A DNA stretch of 64,000 nucleotides from the NCBI GenBank assembly GCA_900088475.1, contig FLMG01004054.1, positions 1 to 64,000 on the forward strand. Direction: 5' to 3'. This DNA is from Hyphochytrium catenoides. Its lineage: Eukaryota > Protista > Hyphochytriomycota. Below are positions 28,566 to 55,708 of the stretch, piece by piece; positions within the stretch are counted from its first letter, which is position 1, and each line of letters opens with the position of its first letter. The position numbers and the translations under genes were made by a program. The notes under the pieces are model-generated. The model worked only from the letters and a program-made list of their open reading frames with translations, searched no databases and was not told the DNA's origin.

Positions 28566-29312
28566 CTAGTCTTCAGCTGCAAGTCCGTCATATGGCGAAA
28601 GGCCGTCCTTGTTCTCTATAGTGTCATCCGCACCCTTCTCAATGAGGAACTCGCCAATTGTTCCTTCTCGGTCGTATGCCATAGCGTAGTGCAGAGGGGT
28701 GTTACCTAACAGAAATCAAAAGGGAGAGACCCATCGGAGGAGAGAAATAAGGAAGATTAGTCTCACGCCATCGTACGATGCGGTATCGGACGCCTAAACA
28801 AGGTAAGTCTTTAGCTCTCTTTTGTGCTAGTTCTCCCTCCCTCTAAAGCATTATCCTGCTGTGGTACATTCTGCACTATTATGTACCTCTCTGATTCCTA
28901 TGGTTGACGTTTGCGCCTCGTGCCAACAGCATCTCTGCCATCTTGAGGTTCGTCTGCTGGCAGGCAACGACAAGAAGTGTATTCCCGTTCTCGTCCTCCG
29001 CATTGACGTTGAACCCTTGGTTAAGACTCTCCTCGACCAGCTTCAGACGTCTATTTCGGCATTGGGAGAAGACGGTCTCAATAGTGGGGACCTTGGCTTT
29101 CTCCCTTAATTCTGCGCTTTGTTGCTCTTGCTCTAACTCCGCTTTCTGGGCCTTCTCTTTGACTGAGAGTGGCCGCATTTTATCCAGAGCGACGAGGATC
29201 TTGCGAACATGAAGCTTGTGCTCGACACCTTGAACAATATCAAAGGAGAAAATGAGAAGAAAAAGCGTTTTTGCTCACTGTAAAGGAAGACTGAAGCGAT
29301 AGGTGGGCCGCT

Positions 29313-29347
<35 letters not shown>

Positions 29348-32300
29348 AGGAAAGAAAGAAAGAAAGAAAAGAGATAGCGAGAGAGAAAAAGAGAGGCAAA
29401 AAGAGAGAAAGAGACACCGGATAGAGACGCACTAAGGGGAAAAAAGGAAAGGCACATAGATAACGTAGCTTGGGAGAATGGGAAGACTAAAATAGAAAGT
29501 GCAGTTTGGGTACCGAGGACGTCTCTCATGTCTTCCGCCCTTAGCTCAAGCAAGAACTCTCCATCCACGGAAGCCTCGGTGAATGCTTGCTTATATTGCG
29601 ACAGAGAGAGTGTGTCCAGCCATCGACCCACATCCTCGACCGTCCAGTCCTTCACTTGCGCAGGGAAGTCTTGTTCTAGGGCTTTTCTTGCCTCTTCAGC
29701 TTCTTTCTTTTTCTTCTCCAACTCCTTTTCCCTCTTCTTTTGGCTCATCTCTTTTGCCTCCATTAGCGCCTCTACATTCTTGTTCTTTGCTCGAGGAATG
29801 TTGGCGGCTGCAGCGGCTGCAGCTGCGGCTGCAGCGGTCTCTGCAGAGGACGAGACTGCCGAGTTGGTTGTGTCGGAGTTGATTTGCCTTAAGTTCTTGA
29901 GCATATTCATGGAGCTCATGTAGGACAAAGACATTGACTGCAGGGAAGTAGTAGTTAGTTTGGAAAAGAACATTACATGGTATTGTTAGACGGGCAATGA
30001 GTATCGCAGGAAAGTGAAGAGGGAAATCGAAGACAGAGAGAGGTAGTACGAGAGATTCGGGGACAGAAGCATTTCAGAAGAGGTTCCAGTCAGTTTAGCT
30101 TCACAAGGAAATCGTAAGAGAGCTGTTTCTTCAGGTCACGATATGAAGCAGCAGGAAGAGGGCATGTGGAATAGCGGAGAGAGAGGCTGTCCACGGGTAC
30201 TAGTCAATAACCATGGAGACAAGAGTAAAAAGGAATCTCTTGGGCGAGTCATTGGAACTTTGGAAGAGGTTTAGGAGTCGAGAGGTAATAAAATATAAAG
30301 GATCCCAGGATCTAGTAGATACCTACCATGAACTGAAACTTCATTAGCTCCTCCGTGCTCTGGAAGATTGCCTGACTCTTTTTCTCGTTCTCTTGCGCCC
30401 GAACTGCGGTAGCAGCAGCAGCGGCAGCGGAGGTTGCAGTAGCTGTTTCCAACTCAATGCCTAAGCAAATGGGTTAGATAGGTTTGAGCTATGTAGATCA
30501 AGACGAGCAACTAAGGCGAACCCTTCGCGCAGGAACAGTGCTTTTCTTCCTAAGCAACTTGCGGACCTTACGCTCACGAGGTCCTAGATTATGCTCCGAC
30601 TCCTTCTCGCCTACCTTTTTCTCTTAGGCTATCCAGCTCTCTCTTCTGCTCCTCGAGTAGTTCCATTAAGTTCTTCTGCAGTCGCCCAAACTCTCGCTCC
30701 TTCCTTATTCTTGTGGCTTCCATATCTGCTATTCTCTCTTCTAATGCTTGGAGTGCATTCTTTTTACTCTCAACCTCTCCATAGACCGACGTAAACTGGG
30801 CCTCCAGCTCCCTCTTCTTCCGCTCTCTTTCTGCCCTTTTCAACTGTATGGCCAGCTCTAAGGCATAACTTTCTTGCTCCGCTCTTCCACCTCTCTGACC
30901 AGGTGTCTGCGGCTTCTGAGGGCTCTTGTTGCCGTCACTGGATGTACAACACACCTGAGCTTGTAAACTACGTGCAAGCAACGAGGAAGTACCGCGGAAG
31001 AAGGAAGGAAAGAGAGGGAAATGACAAGACAACGGAAACGAATGGAAAGAAAGAATCAGGGTTGCTGGATGGAGATGAAAACGTTATCTTATTGGTCAAG
31101 GTTCTCACGCACCTGTTCTGACTCAGGCTCCTGCCTCCTCCTTGCGCCATCTTTTGCTCCTGTTCCTGTGTCATGGCCTGAAGGTCCCGCTCGATCTGAT
31201 CAATCTCCCGTAGCTCCTGCTCAAGAACGGAAAGCTCCTTCTCCGAATCCTACCAAGACAAAGGTGAGCTCACCGTCTTATCGGAAAGAGAGTGAATAAT
31301 GGAGCTGTAGCAGGGCAGAGGCTGCATGAAAATCGCAGAAAGGTCAGCATGTGCAAAAGGTCGTCCCGAACGCGCATATGCAAGTTAGAAAAGCATCCTC
31401 GGCTTGAGGATAATGAAGTGAATGGGTTATGAGTACTGCCCAGAGGAGGTAGATTAACAGCAACATGGAACCACCACTTTCGGTAGTGCGCTCCGTAGGG
31501 CCGGCGTAAGCCAAAGCTGGCGCATACCTTAAGGCTGAGGTGAATCTGGCTGACTCTATCCTCTGCCTGTTCCTGAGAGCGGTGAAGAGCGTCTATCTCT
31601 TCCTGCTGCCTCTGAAAGGCGAGCTTAGACTCTTCTATCATACGTAGACCCAATGACAATCGTTCGGGTCCTGAAGGGCAAGGAAGTCAGAAAAGTCGTA
31701 GACTATACGTAGCCGCAAGTGTAAATTGCTTTTGGAAGCAACAGGCCAGGGTCAGAGACAAAAGTGAGGGGTGTACCGGGAGGGGTGTGCTGCCACTCTC
31801 TTTGCCTGGTGGCTCGCTTTCTTCCCAAGTGCCCTCGATATATTCTCTGCACTTCAGTAGCAGCCATCTCAAGAATCCGTCTAGAGGAGGCGTCAAAGCG
31901 TGTAAAGGTTCAGTGCAAATAGACAGCCTTGAAAGTAAAACAACCAAATAGGCTGCACATCACCAACGAAGTATAGAGATAAGATAGAGAGCTGCACAAA
32001 GCTCACCTTTCTCTGTATCTGTCCCTTTCTCTCTTCATCCGGTAGGTCGCCTGTATTTTGGTAGCGCTTTCGTCTTGAACAATAGCCAACTTTTGCCTAT
32101 TCCACTCTCTCTTGGCATCTTTCCTGCCCAGATGTCCACGGAATATTCTTTGTATGACTCTCGAGGCCTTATCTTTCCTCTTTAACCTTGCCCTCTCTCT
32201 GCCTCTATGCCCCCTGTATACTTTTTCAATGTTGACAGCAGCATCATTCTCTCTTTGCTCTTTCCTCTGCTTCTCCCTGAGTCTCTTGGCCCTCTTTCTT

Positions 32301-35300
32301 CCAAGATATCCTCTTCCAATTCTGCAGAGCGTATGAGCTGCCTCCTGCTCTTGCTCTTCCCTCTCCTTTTGTCTTCTTAGCTCCAGACATCGCTTTCTCC
32401 CCATATATCCTCGGTATGCTGCCTGAATGCGTGTGCAGCAGTAGGACTGATGCCTCTCTTTCTCTTGTGCTGCAAGCAGGGCCATATGTCGCTTTCTTTC
32501 TTGATTCGCCTGCATCATCTGGGCGAAGAGACATCTCTGAGCGTGAGCATCTGAACTTTGCGTCTAACAGCTTCAAGCTTGAGACCGTCTAGAAGCTCTT
32601 CCAGTCTCTCATATGTCCCTACCACTACCTCACCATCCGTATGTCTGCGCGTGGGAGATGGTGTACTCCGTCCTATACCAAATCCCCATTCCTTTATAGT
32701 TCTAGTGTTAGCCGGTTCTTCTCCTTACCTCTTGTTTGACCTTCTCGTATTCTTCTATCTTTAGGATGCCCAGGCGGCTCATCTCTGCCTCTTCTTTCTC
32801 CATCTGATCAAAGATGTTGGAAAGCTCAAGCCTAGACACGACGAACGATTTTTCAAAATCGACAGTTGCGAACGGCAGAGTGGCATCTGGAATGCCGAGT
32901 CTCCAAGAACTATCGATAACCTTGCAACTCACCTCTTAGGAAATAGTGTTGGTGGTTCCAGAGGTTGTGGCCTCTCCATGATAGGCGTAGAAGAGTACAG
33001 AGCTTGGGTGGGAGCAACAACTTTCGTTTCTCCTCCTTGTGGTCTTGAAGCTGAGAGAAAGGTGGCGGCCATTGGCAAAGCCAGAGTAGGAGGGGACGAA
33101 GGACGAGGTTCAGGGGAGAAGGAGTTACTGCTCATTTCCTTCTTCTTGACCTCCTCCCCGCGAAGGAAATCGTCTGCGTCTCGAGGCTGGGCCCCCATCG
33201 ACACAAGAGTCTTAATGTTTGTGCCATGAATGTCCTGATCAACTCTGGAAGGCAGCAGCAAGAGAAGTCAGTCAAAATATCGTTTGACGAGTTGCAAAAA
33301 AACGGTATAAGTAAGGAGAGAAGGCTAAAGCTTAGAATTCAAGGCGATGATGTAACATTGGAGGCAACGTGCAAGAAGGAAAGATTAACGCCGCAAGAAC
33401 CATAAAGCAACGTGGCGGCATTTGCGTCGAAGAGAGTGCTGCGCAAAAGACGGAAGTTAGTAGACAAGAGCGGGGCACTGAGAAACACGATAGGAAAAAG
33501 TGACTTCACTGCTCAAGCTAGTAATGCATCGCTCAAGTACCTTTGCACAGTTCTCTCTATGACTTCAAAGACCTCTCGTCTTGTCTGCTTCCTGTTTGAC
33601 ATCTCCAGTTCGAGAGCACGGATCTTTGCAGCATCCTCCTCCGCCCACTGTTTCCGTCTACGTTCTTGCTCCTCTTTTAGTCTTCTGATGTACTGATCTT
33701 CCTCTTCAATGAGTAAGTCCTTCCCTTTCACCTCTTGCTCTCTCTCAATCTCAGCTTGAAGCTGCTCGCGCTCTTTTATAATAGATTCTATAAAGTTCTT
33801 CCTGTTCTCGATTTCTTCGTCTGCATGAATTGATCGCGCAGGCGATGGAGCTGCTAAAGGAATAGACGGCAAAGGCGGGACTGCATGTGAGTCTCTCAAC
33901 CCGCTATCATTGACCTCCACTTTTGATCCTGCATCCGCCTCCTGTTTTGCAGAGTCCTGCAGCGAACTTTCTTGTCCAGATGATAAGACGTCTGAAAGAG
34001 CAGAAGGAAGACCCGGAGACGTGACGGGTGATGGAGGGGATAGAGATTCCGATGGAATCTCGCTATCCTCCTTGGGCAGCTCCTCTGTACGGCCCAAGCG
34101 GTCAAGTTTACTATTCAAGGAAGAGGAGGACGATGCCTCTAGAACAGCCCCGAGAAAGTCAAGCACCTCCTTCTTTCTCTCCTGTCTAATCTCATGTCCT
34201 CCTTTCATCCATAGAACAAATGTTCCGTGAGGCCTTTTCAGCACCTCAGTGACCTTCTCCTTTGCTTTGACCGTCAAGCGCCCAGCTTCATCTAAGCCAC
34301 CTTGGTTCTTTCCGGCACCCCCTGCGGCTTCTTTTTCTTGTTCCCCATAAGACCATTCGTGGAGTGCTGCCCTCCCTTCAACGAAAGGGTCGACGTTAGA
34401 AGCACTTATGAGCAGGTTGTCTGTGGCTTGTAGTGCGAGGATGGGACACGAGATCTTTGGCAGTTGCTTCCGCATATCTACGCCATGTAGTGCGGACTTG
34501 CAAACACGAATTCGACCCTGCAGCAGATTTGAGGTGGAACCATAATCAGTAAGCGACGAGAGAGAAGAATAAGGGCTTTAGATAGAGCGCAGAAGGCGAT
34601 AGAATTGACTAGCCATGGGAGAGGGATTCTCCGAGAACATAGACAGCTGTTCCATGGCAAAAGGAGAGGTTTCTTAAACTAACTAAGCGCAGGGCTCAGT
34701 ACGTCGTCTACAATCTTCGACAGGCGAGAAGAAATCTGACAAAATTGTCAGAACATAGGGAGGCCAAGTGAGGAGACATTGCGAAAGACTAGGAAAATTG
34801 AGGCCTTGTTAACAGAGAGGCACAACAAAGAGCAGTTGGGATACCGAGAACTTCTGCGGGCCCTTACCTCCAGCGTGATCGGGTTGGTTATGGCCGTGTA
34901 AATGTTTAGAGCAAGGTTCTTGTCCACCCTCTGGAGGTAGTCATCCGAGAAGATAAACTTTGAGAAAAAAGAGATCGGCAAATCTGGGCGTTTGTTAGAG
35001 AGGCAGCCGAAGACATTGATGGAGCTGTGCAAGATAGCAGCGAGCTGAGCGTCCACCCGGGCAAAGCCGTTGAGAAGGATGAGAGACTTCATGGAACTTC
35101 TCAAGCAAATACGCAGATTATGCAAGGACTGCAGGTTGGGCTTAACATCATTGGTTGTAGGGTCCGAGGACTTCAGACCGTCCGCGCACACATTCTGTGC
35201 AGCGAAGCACGAGGCAATGTTGGCACCATTACCGATACCAACTAGATGGAAAGGTAGCTGCAGAATAGGCATTTCTCCCTTTGTATGAATATGGCTAATA

Positions 35301-38300
35301 AGTTCGAGAAGGCGGTCTGCCTGCCATTGGTTGTTCATTTTTTCTCCTGAGAGAGACGCATCAAACTTCGTGTCCGCCTGTGCTGGGTAGTTGTATGCCA
35401 GGATCTGGGAAGAATAACAGAAAAAGATCAAAGGGATCCGCTACTTCCCAGACTGTATACAAGGGAGTAACGATCAGGGCTAAGCGCTACGGATAATTAG
35501 CTTCTCGCCTCTCTTTCTCTTTCTCTTATTTTTCCCTTCCCTAGCTCGTCTGTCGGCACTGAAGCCAAAGATGAGAAAGACAACACGATGATGGGTTTGT
35601 GATGCTTGCCTAATATTCCCTTACCTGACAGCCGGCAAACGCAGTAGAAAGTGGCTTCAAAAACACCAATGTGCTCTCTAGGGTGTCGAAGAAGTCATGA
35701 ACCACAACCAAGCTGCAAGCCTGCCCTGAGAAGTCCGGGGATCCCAGTATGATATAAGGTAGCTCAGTAGCACCGTCTGCACAGGTAAAGAGCTTCGGCA
35801 CCCAGACGGAGGAACCAGTCTCACCTCCAGGCACAGCTGCTAACTTCTCCATGAAGTTCTGAAAGGTGCAGAAAAGAGAGACCGTGAACTCTTTGAAGGT
35901 AGGATATAGCACGTACACGCTTTCTGTCCCATCGCTGACCCTCGTACTCATAACGCTGTCGTCTTGTTTGCCTACCCCGTGGTTTACCATAAAATAGGTA
36001 CTGCTCGCTATATCTCTCTGTCTCTCTCTCGCACATATGTACATCTATGGGATTCCACCAGTATGTACCTTCTGTGCGTTTCTCTTCGCGGCGTCCACAG
36101 CCTTTTTCTGCTTCACCTCTTCATTGTTTGGTGCGACAGGACGGCCAGTCTCCCCTTCTGGCTTAATCGTCATTCTAGATATCGGAGGGAAGAGGTTATC
36201 TGGGGGCCCCGATGGTCCTTTCTCAAGTTCTTCTCTGGAATCCTGCAAAAAAGCTGCAAGGTGTTTGAGGCGCTCGTGGCCTTTGCCATGGCTCCAAGCG
36301 TAAGCCTCAAGCACGTTCGTGATCCTAGTACCATAAGTAACTCAGTCTGTCTGTGTCGCGCATGGGGGGGAAGAAAGAAGGTTTGGAGAGCTAGAGACGC
36401 AAGGGAAGCAGTCAAAAGGTAGACGGACGGTAATGAGAGAGCAAATGATACTGGCTCTCAGGCGCTAGAAAATGCCAATACACGAACGATTCAGTCGACC
36501 CGGTGGAGGAGACTAAGGCATACTGCAAGTGCAGAGAAGGTTGAGAAGACGTTGCACGAGACAAAAGCAAGAGACAAACAATAGCAGTAGATAGGAAGAG
36601 GCCCGCAATCTTTCGTAGCTCCGTCAAAGAGCGACCAGACTGCTCCCGGCACAAATGTGCTGGTTCACCCTCGATGAGTTGATATCGTACCAGGCACAAA
36701 GCTTCGCTGCGCAGTGACTGATGGGCTCGATGGCAGCAGGATTGAAGCGTGGGTTCCTTACGTAAGGCTCTATCAGCCGCAGCTTCTTTTCTGTGAGTCC
36801 TTGCACCTCGAAGGAAGAGAGAAGAGCCAGAAACTTCTCTCCGTTAGCCAGCTTCTTCCTTGCTTCTGGCCACCCGACGACATCTTCTCTCTCCCCTAGC
36901 ATAAGGAGGAGGACCGTGGCTACCATGGACACCGCCGGCGGGGGATTCTTAAAACTTCGGAGCTCTGCTATCTCTCCCTTATTCAACTTAGCAAGACTCA
37001 ATGCAGCTCTGTCAAGTGCTGCCTGCGTTTCTTGCTCAGAGGATTTGCTAGAGGAAAGGGAAAAAGAGTTCAGAAGAGATATTGAGAAAGGACCATGAGC
37101 TAAGAAAGATGGGATCCCCTTGTTTGGGAAACAGCTTCCAAAGTACAGTCACTTCAGAACAACCCTGTACAAGGGCGAGAAAGCATTGCGCGCCGAGAAG
37201 GATCAGGTTATGATAAGGAGTAGTAGAATTAGGACGAACAAGCGTAAGGAAGGTTAAGACGAGTCAGACCGGACAGGCAGACAAACTAGACTAAAAAGAG
37301 GGTAACAGCCCGCCTTCAGAGGACCGACGTGCAGCATGCACCTCAAACCTAGAGATCAGGATCCCCATTCTTACTTACCCGACTCCAAACCTCTCGCTAT
37401 CTTTGTCCTTCTTCCCCTTCTTACTGGCCTGGATTTTAGCTCGGGCCTGCTCCCTGGCCTCTTCTATCATGTCATACACTGCGAAACAATTGCGGCAGAT
37501 GGCTACCTGCTGGTAGTAAACGCCCGGAAACTCCTCGGCCAGAGTAGCTAAAGTTGGCACAGTCCGCCGAAAAGGGTGCATTTAGAGGAAACCATGTGCA
37601 GTCATCCAGCGGATGATGTCAAAGGCTCCGATAAGACGTAAGGAAACTGAAGTCTACTTCGAGTTATGCTAGAGCTAAACGGGTAGCCATAATCGCAACG
37701 AAGGTGTTCAGAGTAGAGAGGGCTGCGAGAGAAGCGGAAAGAGAAGGGACTTACAGTCTTCTGCATCTTCGGAAAGGTAGTCACCTTTTTCCTTTCTCTC
37801 ATAACGTCGCAACAGAAGATCAACTAAGTTTTTCTCCTGTCTCGCCTGAACGATGTCTTTGAAGGGTATCTTAAACGTCTCAGAGCCAGACAAGGCCCGT
37901 TCGTCCCTGATGTCTGCTCCCACGGCACCCCTTACGTGCCGCTCCTGAACAGGAGCCAAATAGTATATGAGATTAGAGAGGAAGGCAGCCAGACGGTGCA
38001 TAGGAGGGGGTGTACGTCCTCTCAACATGTGGCAAAAAAAGAGGAGCACAGACTGTTGCGACTCCGGTATGCATTGTGGGGGACAAAAGATAGATGCATA
38101 CAGAAGGAGGCGCGCATACCATATTCGAGTCACCCATGATTCGCTTAAGCCTGGCCTCTGAGATCTTAGTCTTTATTCCCAAGTGAAGGTCTTTCTGCGC
38201 ACCGTCAGCATCCAGCTGGGGATAATGGGTGGAGTGGTGGGGCAGGAAAAGTTAGTCCACACAAGAGGAGCTTCATAAGAAGAGTCGACCCAACAGATTG

Positions 38301-40471
38301 GCTGAAGAAGGAGCAACTTGTGCGGGGTGTAGCTTCCTCTTCCTTGATCCTCATTTATCATCTTTGTAGGGTAACTGAGACGGTCTAGTCGCTCTCCTTA
38401 CCTTCAGATCATAATGACAAAAATCCCCTGCACAGCCGTTGATTTGAGTGGAACCAAGTAACTCCGCAGCTTGAAGCCGCTTCTGGCGCTGGACGTCAAT
38501 GTAGCGAGAACTCTGGTCGCCTCTATGGCGGGACGGAGACGAGAGAGACTTGGCTGGAGCAGTAGGAGAGAGGCTTTCTCCTCCTTCAGAAGGCTTCCGA
38601 GAAGCACTTAGCCTGCTATTCTCCTGCATAATTTTCGCCACAAGTCCTTCGTCTGGAACAAGAGTGGAGTTTTTCTCTCCTCTCCTCCTTATCCTCTCTT
38701 CAATGTTGGAGGGAATATGGTCTGAGCTTAGAGGGAACCCTTCCGCCATGTGCGTGAAAGGGGTACCCTTACTTCTGGGGTCGCTGGTGGGAGAAGCAGC
38801 ATAAGCCATCCTCTCCCGTTTCTCCACCTCAGAGGACTGGAAGATGCTGATCCTCCCCGGGGCCTCCTTCCCAGGTGATTGTTGCTTCATTGGTGGGGAA
38901 GAAGACTGAGAGCTATTAGAGAGAGTTGCAACTTCAAAGGTCCTTGTGCGGCACAGATGCACTATTCCCTCTCCGTCCAGTAGAAACTCTGCGTCAACAT
39001 ACGTCACTCTGACTTTGTGACAGTTCTCGACCGCACTTCGAGGCAGCGGAGACATGATTTGCAAGAGAGGGATGGAAAAAGAGGATTGATTATAAGGTGA
39101 ACGAGATGATGTGCTTGGCGTCAACTGGATGATGAAGGCAATCCGGACGCTAAGGGGTGGGGTCCATATGGGCAGTAGAAAGAAGAGAGAATGACGATTC
39201 TATAGGGAGTACCCAGGGATGGACGGTAGGGTTGAGACAAGAATAGAACGGAAGGAGCTTAACTGCATACCTGACGACCGACTTCACAATCTCAGTCATC
39301 CTACTGTTAACCCTCGCGGCCATGTTGGGCACCCTCTCAAGCTCTCCCTGCTGTACCGCCGTTACCTTGTGACCCTTGGTGCGGGGTTTGCCATCCCCGT
39401 CCATTCTGGCAACAGGAAAGAAGAGAGATTGTGGGGTGAGGTCAAGCAGAGAAAGAGCCGTAAAACTAGGTTTCCGTGTGAGACCCAAGCTGCATAGGTT
39501 GATCCGTTTTACGATTGTCAAACCACAATTTTATCTTTTCTGCCTCTGGCTTTATCTCCCCCACAAGACTGCACCTCTCCCAACTGTGTGATCCCTTGCA
39601 ACCTCTTTACCTGTACTCTAGCTCGTAGTTCGCATAACCTCCTAGAGGCGGGACCCCTCCTTTCGGGTCTGCATAAGCCTGAAAGCAAGTCACCTCTATA
39701 GGGATGCGAGACAAGAATTCGCCCACTTCGTTAAGGTTGACGATCTGCGGTGAGAGATGAGGAGGTGAGGCAACGGTGGAGATTTGTGGCATGTTGGAGA
39801 CAAACATGAAGTCTAGGAGCTGTCACATGGAGTCATGGCTAATGGAAGGAAGCAGGTGGCAGCAAGGAGAGAGTGACGAGCGGCAAAGGGATGATTGCAA
39901 CAGAGGAGTATGTTGGCGAACATGATGAAGAGCCAGCACCTTGACTGCTCCAGTATCGTAATAAGCTACGAGAATGCTCTTCTTCTTGTTATTCGGAAAG
40001 CCCATGGCGATGTGTTCTAAGGCTTCCTTTACAGCTTGAGGCGTCAAGTGCTTCTCGCTCCTTCGCTGCACCACGCCCTTGGCGCTTGTAAAGAGCCAAC
40101 TCTGCATCTGGCCCTCACTGACATGGATTGTATCGAGGATCTTTGCCTCACATGGCTGCCATATTTAGAGAAGCAGTCATAGATGGGGCAGTGAGGTGCC
40201 GATTGAAGGTGCGGGTGAAAGGAAGGAGGTGACGTAATGGAGGTAGGATAGGAGCTAAAAGAAAAAAAAAACATCCGCAAGATGGCAGGTAAGGAAAAGG
40301 GGGGCGGGCGGAGAAGGTGAACGTGGACATCCTGCGACTCACCATATCGTTACCCCTGGAGGCCATGGCCTGGCAGACCCAGGCCCAGTCCTTGCACACT
40401 GGGACCTGATTTGGTTCTAAGAAGCTGTTAGGCTTCAGGTCCCGAGTGATTTGCTGCACTTGAGACATCAT
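28566..40471 (-). CDS. Giant multidomain protein (~2,200 aa, ~24 exons): ATP-grasp-like region, Cys4 site, dynein MTBD, NDRG-like alpha/beta hydrolase fold, six IQ motifs, coiled coil, SAM, ankyrin repeats
   Basis: Exons chain in phase through GT-AG introns from ATG 40471 (in-frame TAA upstream) to TAG 28566. Motifs: CAGDFC and CRNC; LNKGEIAELRSFKNPPPAV...CAAKLCAWI; VVHDFF and HLVGIGNGA; IQxxYRGxxGRK; WTVEDVGRWLDTLSLSQY...VDGEFLLEL; GNTLLVVAC and GNTPLHYA. Confidence 0.85.
29315..29342. repeat. (GA)n microsatellite in an intron
   Basis: Direct reading. Confidence 0.9.

Positions 40472-54337: not shown

Positions 54338-55708
<1,371 letters not shown>

What the first reader, a model, noticed from the sequence alone, without database searches (positions are those of the whole stretch)
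36300..37027. Dynein heavy-chain microtubule-binding domain without any AAA ring
Seen: ALDRAALSLAKLNKGEIAELRSFKNPPPAVSMVATVLLLML...WPEARKKL...FLALLSSF...YVRNPRFNPAAIEPISHCAAKLCAWITNVL. This tracks the dynein stalk tip (CC1 end, MTBD helices, CC2 start), but no Walker A/AAA sequence flanks it and the stalk coiled coil is truncated. Inference: an MTBD with fixed affinity, or one regulated by something other than a motor, reused as a tether.
Basis: partly seen in the sequence, partly recalled or inferred. Interest (0 to 1): 0.75.

Follow-up and report, generated by a model that had tools for sequence, protein, structure and literature searches.

The report
Motor-less dynein microtubule-binding domain scaffold
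A stramenopile gene holds a real copy of the small domain that dynein motors use to grip microtubules, but it sits inside a large non-motor scaffold protein conserved across stramenopiles, so the grip seems to have been reused as a passive, perhaps calcium-regulated, anchor.

Summary
Minus-strand exon 37047-36691 encodes a dynein-type microtubule-binding domain (MTBD). Pfam MT scores E 1.7e-17. All PDB sequence and fold matches are dynein MTBDs (TM 0.81-0.85, model pLDDT 91). No dynein AAA module lies on this contig, while all 17 other MT-bearing contigs except C1946 carry AAA_8 and AAA_9.

It is not a stand-alone domain. It is an internal domain of one gene of about 11.6 kb (about 40150 to 28569, minus strand). 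The order is: unknown N-terminal region, MTBD, serine-less alpha/beta-hydrolase-like module, IQ motifs, coiled coil, SAM, ankyrin repeats. A 2724-aa Triparma protein aligns collinearly in 16 blocks. Named relatives are all stramenopiles, annotated only as hypothetical or SAM-domain proteins. I found no paper on them.

The stalk is a stub of about two heptads in all orthologues. Five of six known tubulin salt-bridge positions are kept (H1 K23/E28/R30, H3 R63/K64). The H6 arginine is replaced by proline, and a clade-specific lysine appears at position 115.

The scaffold MTBDs form one clade apart from dynein MTBDs. A fixed-affinity tether is the likeliest role, but microtubule binding is untested. 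The tubulin complex job gave no verdict, and no RNA run held the stretch.

The parts
36691..37047 (-). MTBD exon: short CC1 end, helices H1-H6, first residues of CC2 (118 whole codons = window:36693-37046:-)
   Evidence: Pfam MT E 1.7e-17. PDB hits are all dynein. AF2 pLDDT 91.3 and Foldseek top 50 all dynein MTBDs. Splice sites read.
36325..36690 (-). Intron (GT...AG, 366 nt) splitting codon W (tg|g) at the H6/CC2 boundary
   Evidence: Sequence read. The join reproduces the orthologue motif AAKFCAW-VLG..AY.W.
36069..36324 (-). Next exon: rest of the CC2 stub (ITNVLEAYAWSHGKGHERL), then a proline-rich, basic linker; probable donor GT at 36068-67
   Evidence: Matches orthologue 'WVLGVVNAYKCRKGLAHERV'. 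No Pfam family on the enclosing open segment 36048-36341.
37379..37547 (-). Preceding exon with the conserved FPGxYY...C-x2-C-F..Y.MIEEAR motif; donor GTAAGT at 37378-73 in matching phase
   Evidence: tblastn to seven orthologues. Sequence read. Motif conserved in orthologues.
37735..37941 (-). Conserved N-terminal block (LVDLLLRRYERKEKGDYL...)
   Evidence: tblastn, 41-60% identity to orthologues.
38390..39070 (-). Large N-terminal exon, conserved, fold unknown, serine-rich
   Evidence: tblastn E 1e-7 to 4e-9 to six orthologues. No Pfam family.
39958..40149 (-). Most upstream block aligned to orthologue N-termini; the start codon lies at or upstream of 40107
   Evidence: tblastn P0212 46-103 (E 1.8e-8) and P0165 13-84.
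34149..35868 (-). Alpha/beta-hydrolase-like module in three exons (about 35868-35622, 35410-34856, 34553-34149); nucleophile motif reads HLVGIGNGA, with no serine
   Evidence: tblastn E up to 1.6e-47. A2 profile hits in the own genome. Weak Pfam Abhydrolase_1/Hydrolase_4/Ndr in orthologues. Motif seen.
31706..32563 (-). IQ calmodulin-binding motifs (at least four)
   Evidence: Pfam IQ E 5.6e-13 with 3 stretches, plus one more at E 0.002. Collinear with the orthologues' IQ region.
30327..31671 (-). Highly conserved coiled-coil blocks (61-78% identical to Triparma and others)
   Evidence: tblastn. Heptad-like, charged sequence.
29497..29901 (-). SAM domain
   Evidence: Pfam SAM_1 E 3.8e-11, SAM_2 E 2e-10. 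tblastn.
28569..29226 (-). C-terminal ankyrin repeats in two exons; the frame ends ...DGLAAED, then a stop
   Evidence: Pfam Ank families E 2e-7 to 4e-5. tblastn 48-72% identity.

Best explanation
The exon encodes a genuine dynein-type microtubule-binding domain that evolution lifted out of a dynein heavy chain and built into a large non-motor scaffold protein conserved across stramenopiles. The order of modules is: N-terminal region of unknown fold, disordered linker, MTBD on a coiled-coil stub of about two heptads, linker, catalytically dead alpha/beta-hydrolase-like module, IQ motifs, conserved coiled coil, SAM, ankyrin repeats.

Shown here: the fold, the absence of any AAA module, the stub-length stalk, the single-gene architecture and its conservation, and the retention of the H1 and H3 tubulin-contact residues.

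Inferred: the MTBD docks the scaffold on the microtubule lattice at the alpha/beta-tubulin intradimer site. Its affinity is fixed by the stub's registry, because there is no ATPase to drive a registry change. Avidity would come from dimerisation or oligomerisation through the coiled coil and SAM. Regulation, if any, would come from Ca2+/calmodulin-like proteins on the IQ motifs. The ankyrin repeats and the pseudo-hydrolase would hold partners at the microtubule.
For: The MTBD is real: Pfam MT E 1.7e-17, PDB hits are only dyneins, and the AF2 model (pLDDT 91.3) has TM 0.81-0.85 to solved MTBDs.

There is no motor. AAA_8 and AAA_9 are absent from contig C1506 but present on all 17 other MT-bearing contigs except C1946.

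It is one gene. Triparma P0152 aligns collinearly in 16 blocks from 39037 to 28578, and six other relatives (five other clusters; P0019 is P0152's cluster representative) give the same order. The same Pfam order MT-IQ-SAM-Ank is seen in P0152 and P0030.

The family has 123 members. All named ones are stramenopiles: Triparma, Ectocarpus, Phytophthora, Pythium, Aphanomyces, Saprolegnia, Chrysophaeum and Hondaea.

The stub stalk is family-wide. In the orthologue model only a 14-residue CC1 helix and a 21-residue H6+CC2 helix fold, and the flanks are disordered.

Tubulin salt-bridge positions of yeast dynein (PMC7042235) are kept in the scaffold clade: K23 82% K/R, E28 100%, R30 87%, R63 90%, K64 79%.

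Against: Microtubule binding was not tested. The complex job with the organism's own tubulin dimer gave no verdict.

The H6 arginine that bridges alpha-tubulin E415/E420 is basic in 60% of the dynein rows (a further 30% have K at the next column) but is proline in 69% of scaffold proteins, with only 5% K/R. The interface is therefore altered.

No transcript evidence exists for the exon joins, because no listed RNA run holds the stretch. The gene model rests on orthology and splice-site reading.

The roles of the IQ, SAM and ankyrin modules are inferred from family knowledge only.
Confidence: 0.6

Rival explanations
1. The MTBD fold is kept but re-targeted. It no longer binds the microtubule lattice and instead binds another ligand (free tubulin, a tubulin-like or acidic protein, or another part of the same scaffold), or it serves only as a structural module.
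For: The H6 arginine is lost and replaced by proline. The clade has its own conserved residues that dyneins lack: K/R115 92% against 0%, K/R at position 102 56% against 0% (23% more have His), and C112 and C117. A long, well-supported branch (SH-aLRT 100, length 0.92) separates the scaffold MTBDs from dynein MTBDs. The complex test with tubulin did not reach the mark, which is not evidence either way.
Against: Five of the six tubulin salt-bridge positions, the invariant H1 glutamate and the W..A(K/R)(K/R) motif of H3 are conserved as strongly as in dyneins over a divergence spanning oomycetes to ochrophytes. That is hard to explain without the same ligand. K115 lies seven residues after the lost arginine, on the same helical face by helix geometry (an inference), so it may compensate.
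Confidence: 0.27
2. A specialised variant of the tether idea: the protein is a flagellar or zoospore component that docks on axonemal doublets or flagellar-root microtubules, in the way axonemal dynein MTBDs do.
For: Axonemal heavy chains are the nearest solved relatives (DNAH9 6.7e-13, DNAH1, DNAH17), ahead of cytoplasmic dynein at 1e-6 to 2e-4. Named family members all come from lineages with flagellate stages. MT, IQ and EF-hand domain genes are depleted in non-flagellate downy mildews (PMC6264045).
Against: The phyletic pattern comes from a capped word-based search, so absences are unreliable. The downy-mildew depletion is driven by true dyneins and does not address this gene. There are no localisation or proteome data, and no paper names any orthologue.
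Confidence: 0.3
3. Artefact: a dynein heavy-chain pseudogene fragment, an assembly chimera, or a chance match.
For: A single exon carries the match, and there is no RNA support.
Against: The open frame has canonical splice sites in matching phase. The same domain sits at the same place in more than 60 full-length proteins from independent genomes. The E-values and the fold match are far beyond chance. The clade-specific sequence signature excludes a recent dynein fragment.
Confidence: 0.02

Closest known systems
Dynein heavy-chain MTBD (e.g. human DNAH9 in 8j07, mouse/human DYNC1H1 in 3err, 6rzb, 8ptk)
   Same: The same six-helix fold (TM 0.81-0.85, rmsd 1.6-2.0 A). The same H1 motif K-x4-E-x-R followed by PP..V. 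The same H3 W..A(K/R)(K/R) motif. There is no 'flap' insertion, as in DNAH9 and dynein-1.
   Different: No AAA+ ring, linker or tail. The stalk is cut from about 100 residues per strand to about two heptads. The CC1 leucine and proline that are invariant in the 10 dynein rows aligned (exon positions 4 and 9) are not conserved. The H6 arginine is replaced by proline, and a new conserved K/R appears at position 115.
Engineered short-stalk MTBD constructs (seryl-tRNA-synthetase fusions; 3err, 3j1t, 6rzb)
   Same: An MTBD held on a short antiparallel coiled coil, with the registry fixed by the base rather than by an ATPase. Such constructs bind microtubules on their own (PMC6629372). This is the nearest functional analogue of what this gene encodes naturally.
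   Different: Those are laboratory chimeras of true dynein MTBDs. Here the stub ends in disordered linkers inside a natural multi-domain protein, and the registry it adopts is unknown.
Stramenopile 'SAM domain-containing protein' orthologues (Triparma columacea GMI31103.1, Ectocarpus siliculosus CBN77304.1 / D8LNE7, Saprolegnia diclina SDRG_03101, Phytophthora cactorum PC129_g6452)
   Same: The same gene family. They are collinear over the whole length, with the same order MT - hydrolase-like - IQ - coiled coil - SAM - Ank.
   Different: This genome's copy is unannotated. Its MTBD is at most 47% identical to any of them. Its linker before the MTBD is much shorter. No member has been studied.
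Receiver-domain sister scaffolds (e.g. Triparma strigata TrST_g11590, Hondaea, Aphanomyces; Pfam Response_reg + hydrolase-like + IQ + SAM + Ank)
   Same: The same chassis from the hydrolase-like module to the C-terminus. A copy is present in this genome on contig C3139.
   Different: They carry a CheY-like receiver and show no MTBD match. This suggests one chassis with alternative heads, though the relative position of the heads was not aligned.
NDRG-type inactive alpha/beta-hydrolases
   Same: An alpha/beta-hydrolase-like sequence with PGQ and G-x-G-x-G-A motifs and no nucleophile serine. The resemblance to NDRG is recalled from memory.
   Different: Membership is not supported. Pfam Ndr matched only 1 of 12 orthologues at E 0.03, and a profile search of the PDB found nothing.

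Membership tests
Dynein heavy chain (motor) | AAA+ modules AAA4 and AAA5 (Pfam AAA_8, AAA_9) flanking the stalk | tested here: not met
   There are 58 AAA_8 and 53 AAA_9 matches in the genome, none on contig C1506. All other MT-bearing contigs except C1946 have both. Flanking exons have no AAA hit.
Dynein heavy chain (motor) | Long antiparallel coiled-coil stalk (Pfam MT positions 1-344 covered) | tested here: not met
   Only profile positions 87-214 match. The orthologue model has a 14-residue CC1 helix and a 21-residue H6+CC2 helix with disordered flanks. Flanks are unconserved.
Dynein MTBD domain (fold level) | Six-helix bundle H1-H6 at the tip of CC1/CC2 | tested here: met
   AF2 pLDDT 91.3, pTM 0.83. 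The Foldseek top 50 are all dynein MTBDs, TM 0.81-0.85. The ESM Atlas top rows are MT-domain clusters, TM 0.82-0.89.
Pfam MT (PF12777) | Score above the gathering threshold (24 bits) | tested here: met
   63.9 bits, E 1.7e-17.
Dynein MTBD (functional interface) | H1 salt-bridge residues (yeast K3117, E3122, R3124) | tested here: met
   K23, E28 and R30 are present. They are conserved at 82%, 100% and 87% in the scaffold clade (residue list from PMC7042235).
Dynein MTBD (functional interface) | H3 basic pair contacting beta-tubulin | tested here: met
   R63 and K64 are 90% and 79% K/R in the scaffold clade, against 90% and 80% in dyneins.
Dynein MTBD (functional interface) | H6 arginine/lysine contacting alpha-tubulin E415/E420 (yeast R3201) | tested here: not met
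   The column (position 108) is Pro in this exon and in 69% of the scaffold clade, with 5% K/R. Dynein rows have 60% K/R there, plus 30% at the next column.
Dynein MTBD (functional interface) | Binds microtubules | not testable with these tools
   The complex job with the organism's own alpha/beta-tubulin gave no verdict. A binding assay is needed.
Stramenopile MTBD-hydrolase-IQ-SAM-ankyrin scaffold (unnamed family) | Collinear full-length similarity and the same domain order | tested here: met
   16 collinear tblastn blocks to P0152, with the same order in six other relatives. Pfam IQ, SAM and Ank on this window's exons. The window's MTBD falls inside the scaffold clade.
Catalytic alpha/beta-hydrolases | Nucleophile serine in G-x-S-x-G | tested here: not met
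   The motif reads G-I-G-N-G-A in the window. There is no serine at that position in any of 12 orthologues.
NDRG (Pfam Ndr) | Significant match to the Ndr profile | tested here: inconclusive
   1 of 12 orthologues matched at E 0.03. Abhydrolase_1 matched 5 of 12 with best E 1e-4. There was no PDB sequence hit.

The most novel reading that the evidence does not exclude
The dynein MTBD is not exclusive to motors. Early in stramenopile evolution it was captured once as a portable microtubule-targeting head on a Ca2+/calmodulin-responsive signalling chassis (pseudo-hydrolase, IQ, coiled coil, SAM, ankyrin). A sister version of that chassis carries a phospho-receiver head instead. The residue lost from H6 is the one tied in dyneins to coupling microtubule binding with ATPase activation. 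If so, this family is a natural experiment on which parts of the MTBD serve binding and which serve motor signalling. The second motor-less MTBD protein in this genome (C1946) and possible further occurrences elsewhere (an oomycete cluster in which a third carry Impact_N and 14% carry MT; mollusc hypothetical clusters, one with 16% EF-hand), which were not followed up, would make MTBD reuse recurrent.
Probability: 0.35. Interest if true: 0.78.

Novelty: new variant of a known kind. Interest (0 to 1): 0.62.

Why it matters
The MTBD is normally treated as part of the dynein motor, with its affinity set through the stalk by the AAA ring. A conserved protein family that keeps the MTBD and discards the stalk and motor would show that the domain works as an autonomous microtubule-binding module.

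It would give a natural fixed-registry MTBD. That allows a direct comparison of which interface residues are needed for binding (H1 and H3, kept) and which for signalling to the ATPase (the H6 arginine and the CC1 proline, lost).

It would also point to an unstudied microtubule-associated scaffold, possibly calcium-regulated. The family occurs in a group that includes brown algae and oomycete plant and animal pathogens, where zoospore and cytoskeletal biology matter.

The orthologues are already in public databases as 'hypothetical' or 'SAM domain-containing' proteins, so the idea can be tested now in Ectocarpus or Phytophthora.

Tried and rejected
1. Complex prediction of the MTBD exon with this genome's own alpha-tubulin (L009:1549-2913:-, residues 1-440) and beta-tubulin (window:54341-55678:-, residues 1-430). 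The result was no verdict, with scores 0.20 and 0.18 against a mark of 0.34, and the controls were not run. It counts neither for nor against binding.

2. RNA evidence. No listed run holds the stretch. The splice joins rest on consensus sites, matching phase and orthologue continuity.

3. The search for homologous proteins with the C1946 paralogue (988 aa) found nothing.

4. The ESM Atlas feature search on the closest orthologue gave only generic bacterial alpha/beta-hydrolase clusters below 0.9.

5. A profile of the hydrolase-like module found no match in the PDB.

6. No Pfam family matched the N-terminal regions of seven orthologues.

7. A genome-wide PF00072 scan did not list contig C3139. 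The receiver head of the local sister gene is supported only by tblastn collinearity.

8. Literature searches for motor-less or MTBD-like domains, for PF12777, and for orthologue accessions found no description of this family.

10. All searches used single exons by reference or contiguous orthologue proteins. No whole-protein search, fold or length estimate of this window's own product was made.

11. Rejected readings: dynein pseudogene fragment, assembly chimera, and chance match (see rival explanations).
Full report
WHAT IS THERE. The finding lies on the minus strand of an intron-containing eukaryotic genome (61 Mb, 4759 contigs; this window is contig C1506). The quoted peptide is encoded by exon 37047-36691. 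Its acceptor AG is at 37049-48 and its donor GT at 36690-89. It continues after a 366-nt intron at 36324. The join splits a tryptophan codon and reproduces the motif seen uninterrupted in orthologues (AAKFCAW-VLG..AY.W). Every search used a single exon by reference or a contiguous orthologue protein.

IS IT A DYNEIN MTBD? Yes, on three independent tests.
- The exon alone matches Pfam MT (PF12777) at E 1.7e-17 and 63.9 bits, against a cut-off of 24. The match covers only profile positions 87-214 of 344, which is the globular tip with short coiled-coil ends.
- Against all PDB chains it matches 50 distinct sequences, all dynein heavy chains. Axonemal chains come first (DNAH9 6.7e-13, DNAH1, DNAH17) and cytoplasmic dynein-1 scores 1e-6 to 2e-4.
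- An AlphaFold2 model built on an 89-sequence alignment is confident (pLDDT 91.3, pTM 0.83). Its 50 best structural matches are all dynein MTBDs, with TM 0.81-0.85 and rmsd 1.6-2.0 A to dynein-1.

IS THERE REALLY NO MOTOR? Yes. The neighbouring exons give no AAA match. Genome-wide scans for the two AAA modules that bracket the stalk in every heavy chain find 58 (AAA_8) and 53 (AAA_9) matches. None is on C1506. Of the 19 contigs with an MT match, 17 carry both modules. The two exceptions are this contig and C1946. Contig C3191 (L002) served as a positive control and is an ordinary heavy chain with AAA exons on both sides of its MTBD.

WHAT GENE IS IT? An exhaustive HMMER search with the exon returned, as its best hits, proteins of 400-2400 aa rather than heavy chains. 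Full-length dyneins appear only from about E 1e-11. One hit cluster includes a named protein, Triparma columacea GMI31103.1. It is 2724 aa and annotated 'SAM domain-containing protein'. Its Pfam order is MT (717-836), IQ, SAM (2519-2581), Ank (2620-2704).

Mapped onto the window by tblastn, it aligns collinearly on the minus strand in 16 blocks from 39037 to 28578. Six other relatives (five other clusters) give the same order, and orthologue N-termini extend the gene to about 40150. This window's exons carry, in the same order:
- the MTBD;
- an alpha/beta-hydrolase-like module (35868-34149);
- at least four IQ motifs (Pfam 5.6e-13);
- coiled-coil blocks 61-78% identical to the orthologues;
- a SAM domain (3.8e-11);
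- ankyrin repeats ending at 28569.

The MTBD is therefore an internal domain of one gene of about 11.6 kb. Two earlier first-reader notes on this genome proposed the same gene span. I tested this here and it holds.

THE FAMILY. A search with the Triparma protein found 123 relatives. Every named one is a stramenopile: Triparma spp., Ectocarpus and Discosporangium, many Phytophthora, Pythium, Lagenidium, Aphanomyces, Achlya, Saprolegnia, Chrysophaeum and Hondaea. They are annotated only as hypothetical, SAM-domain, or by automatic names. Phytophthora copies lack a precomputed MT hit but do carry the domain (E 2e-15 to this exon).

A sister branch has the same chassis with a CheY-like receiver and no MTBD match. 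This genome appears to hold a copy on contig C3139, although a Pfam receiver scan did not list that contig.

The genome itself is a stramenopile without a close sequenced relative. One of its outer-arm-type heavy chains is at most 68% identical to any named protein, and all of its best named hits are stramenopiles.

A maximum-likelihood tree of 93 MTBD segments separates a 60-row clade from all true dynein MTBDs by a branch with SH-aLRT 100 and length 0.92. That clade holds the scaffold proteins (one row labelled scaffold, P0129, fell with the dyneins and is probably a dynein fragment), fragments of them, this exon and the C1946 paralogue. The tree is consistent with a single capture of the domain. 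With 116 columns, it cannot say which dynein class was the donor.

THE STALK. Dynein stalks have roughly 100 residues per strand. Here conservation starts about 20 residues before the ELRSF..PP.AV motif and ends about 15 residues after AAKFCAW. Unconserved, low-complexity linkers lie beyond on both sides. In a model of the closest orthologue with 40-residue flanks, only a 14-residue CC1 helix and a 21-residue H6+CC2 helix fold. Both flanks have pLDDT below 60. A leucine and a proline in CC1 that are invariant in the 10 dynein rows aligned (exon positions 4 and 9) are not conserved in the scaffold clade.

THE INTERFACE. Nishida et al. (PMC7042235) list six salt-bridge residues of the yeast MTBD: H1 K3117, E3122 and R3124; H3 R3152 and R3159; H6 R3201. 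The matching columns compare as follows.

| Position (this exon) | Helix | Scaffold clade | Dyneins |
|---|---|---|---|
| K23 | H1 | 82% K/R | 100% K/R |
| E28 | H1 | 100% E | 100% E |
| R30 | H1 | 87% K/R | 100% K/R |
| R63 | H3 | 90% K/R | 90% K/R |
| K64 | H3 | 79% K/R | 80% K/R |
| P108 | H6 | 69% Pro, 5% K/R | 60% K/R, plus 30% at the next column |
| K115 | H6 | 92% K/R | 0% K/R |

Position 115 lies seven residues further along H6 than position 108, which by helix geometry puts it on the same face (an inference). Uchimura et al. (PMC4298687) tie the H6 basic residues and the H1 glutamate to the coupling between microtubule binding and ATPase activation. Loss of one of these in a protein without an ATPase is suggestive, but it is an inference only.

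HOW IT MOST LIKELY WORKS. Published structures show that an MTBD on a short, fixed-registry coiled coil binds microtubules on its own. They also show that only CC1 and H1 move on binding, so the domain is 'permanently primed' (PMC6629372). The likeliest mechanism is therefore a passive anchor. The stub sets one registry and hence one affinity. The coiled coil and SAM multiply the heads. The IQ motifs offer a Ca2+/calmodulin input. The ankyrin repeats and the serine-less hydrolase-like module (motif G-I-G-N-G-A) hold partners.

Shown: the fold, the missing motor, the stub, the architecture, the conservation and the retained contacts. Inferred: the binding itself, its site, and any regulation. 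I put this reading at 0.6, a re-targeted fold at about 0.27, and an artefact at 0.02. Whether the target is axonemal or flagellar-root microtubules is open. Axonemal chains are the nearest relatives, and named members all come from flagellate lineages. The absences, however, come from a capped search, and the downy-mildew data concern true dyneins.

LIMITS. There is no transcript evidence and no binding test. The tubulin complex job returned no verdict and is not used as evidence. Exon boundaries outside 37547-36069 are approximate and taken from tblastn blocks.

NOVELTY. The domain and all the other modules are known, and the orthologues sit in public databases with automatic domain marks. 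Eight full-text searches found no paper describing a dynein MTBD in a non-motor protein or naming any orthologue. I class it as a new variant of a known kind.

Noticed in passing
L001:4319-7285 (+) = G000 contig C1946:30318-33284: A second motor-less MTBD protein in this genome. It is a 988-aa single-exon ORF with Pfam MT (E 4e-16, residues 304-417) as its only domain, in otherwise low-complexity sequence. It carries the scaffold-type signature (AASKLCAW) and falls in the scaffold clade on a long branch. No AAA_8 or AAA_9 match lies on its contig.
   Followed up: partly
L012/L013 = G000 contig C3139:1844-10485 (+): A sister scaffold gene collinear with receiver-domain (CheY-like) family members (hydrolase-like, IQ, coiled coil). 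The contig ends before the C-terminus. The receiver domain itself was not confirmed by a Pfam scan.
   Followed up: partly
window 54338-55678 (-): An intronless beta-tubulin gene (446 aa) lies about 14 kb upstream of the scaffold gene's start, on the same strand. An intronless alpha-tubulin is on contig C752 (L009:1549-2913, minus strand). The proximity is probably a coincidence.
   Followed up: partly
proteins P0001, P0003-P0006, P0008-P0011, P0027: Proteins of 400-1900 aa made of 2-6 tandem MTBD-like domains with no AAA modules. Sources include Picozoa, Cyanophora paradoxa, an MMETSP transcript, a sandfly entry and metagenomes. In the tree their domains sit with true dynein MTBDs, not with the scaffold clade. 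Some may be assembly artefacts.
   Followed up: partly
ESM Atlas clusters (rows 8-10): The MTBD fold also appears in a 398-aa oomycete cluster named after Impact_N (33% carry Impact_N, 14% carry PF12777). It also appears in mollusc 'hypothetical protein' clusters, one of 751 aa in which 16% carry an EF-hand. These suggest further non-motor uses of the domain.
   Followed up: no
window about 41100-40750 and 29480-29240 (-): Long CT/GA-type microsatellites that translate as runs of SLSLSL or RSRSRS, in introns or flanks of the scaffold gene.
   Followed up: no
window 38354-39199 and 37379-37547 (-): The N-terminal region is conserved across orthologues but matches no Pfam family. It contains a conserved FPGxYY...C-x2-C-F motif just before the linker to the MTBD. 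The ATP-grasp idea found no support here.
   Followed up: partly
whole genome (G000): The lineage is a stramenopile with no close annotated relative. An outer-arm-type dynein heavy chain (C3798) is at most 68% identical to any named protein (Triparma), and similarly distant from oomycetes (67%) and brown algae (64%). The only sequencing runs linked to the window come from a soil metatranscriptome study.
   Followed up: partly
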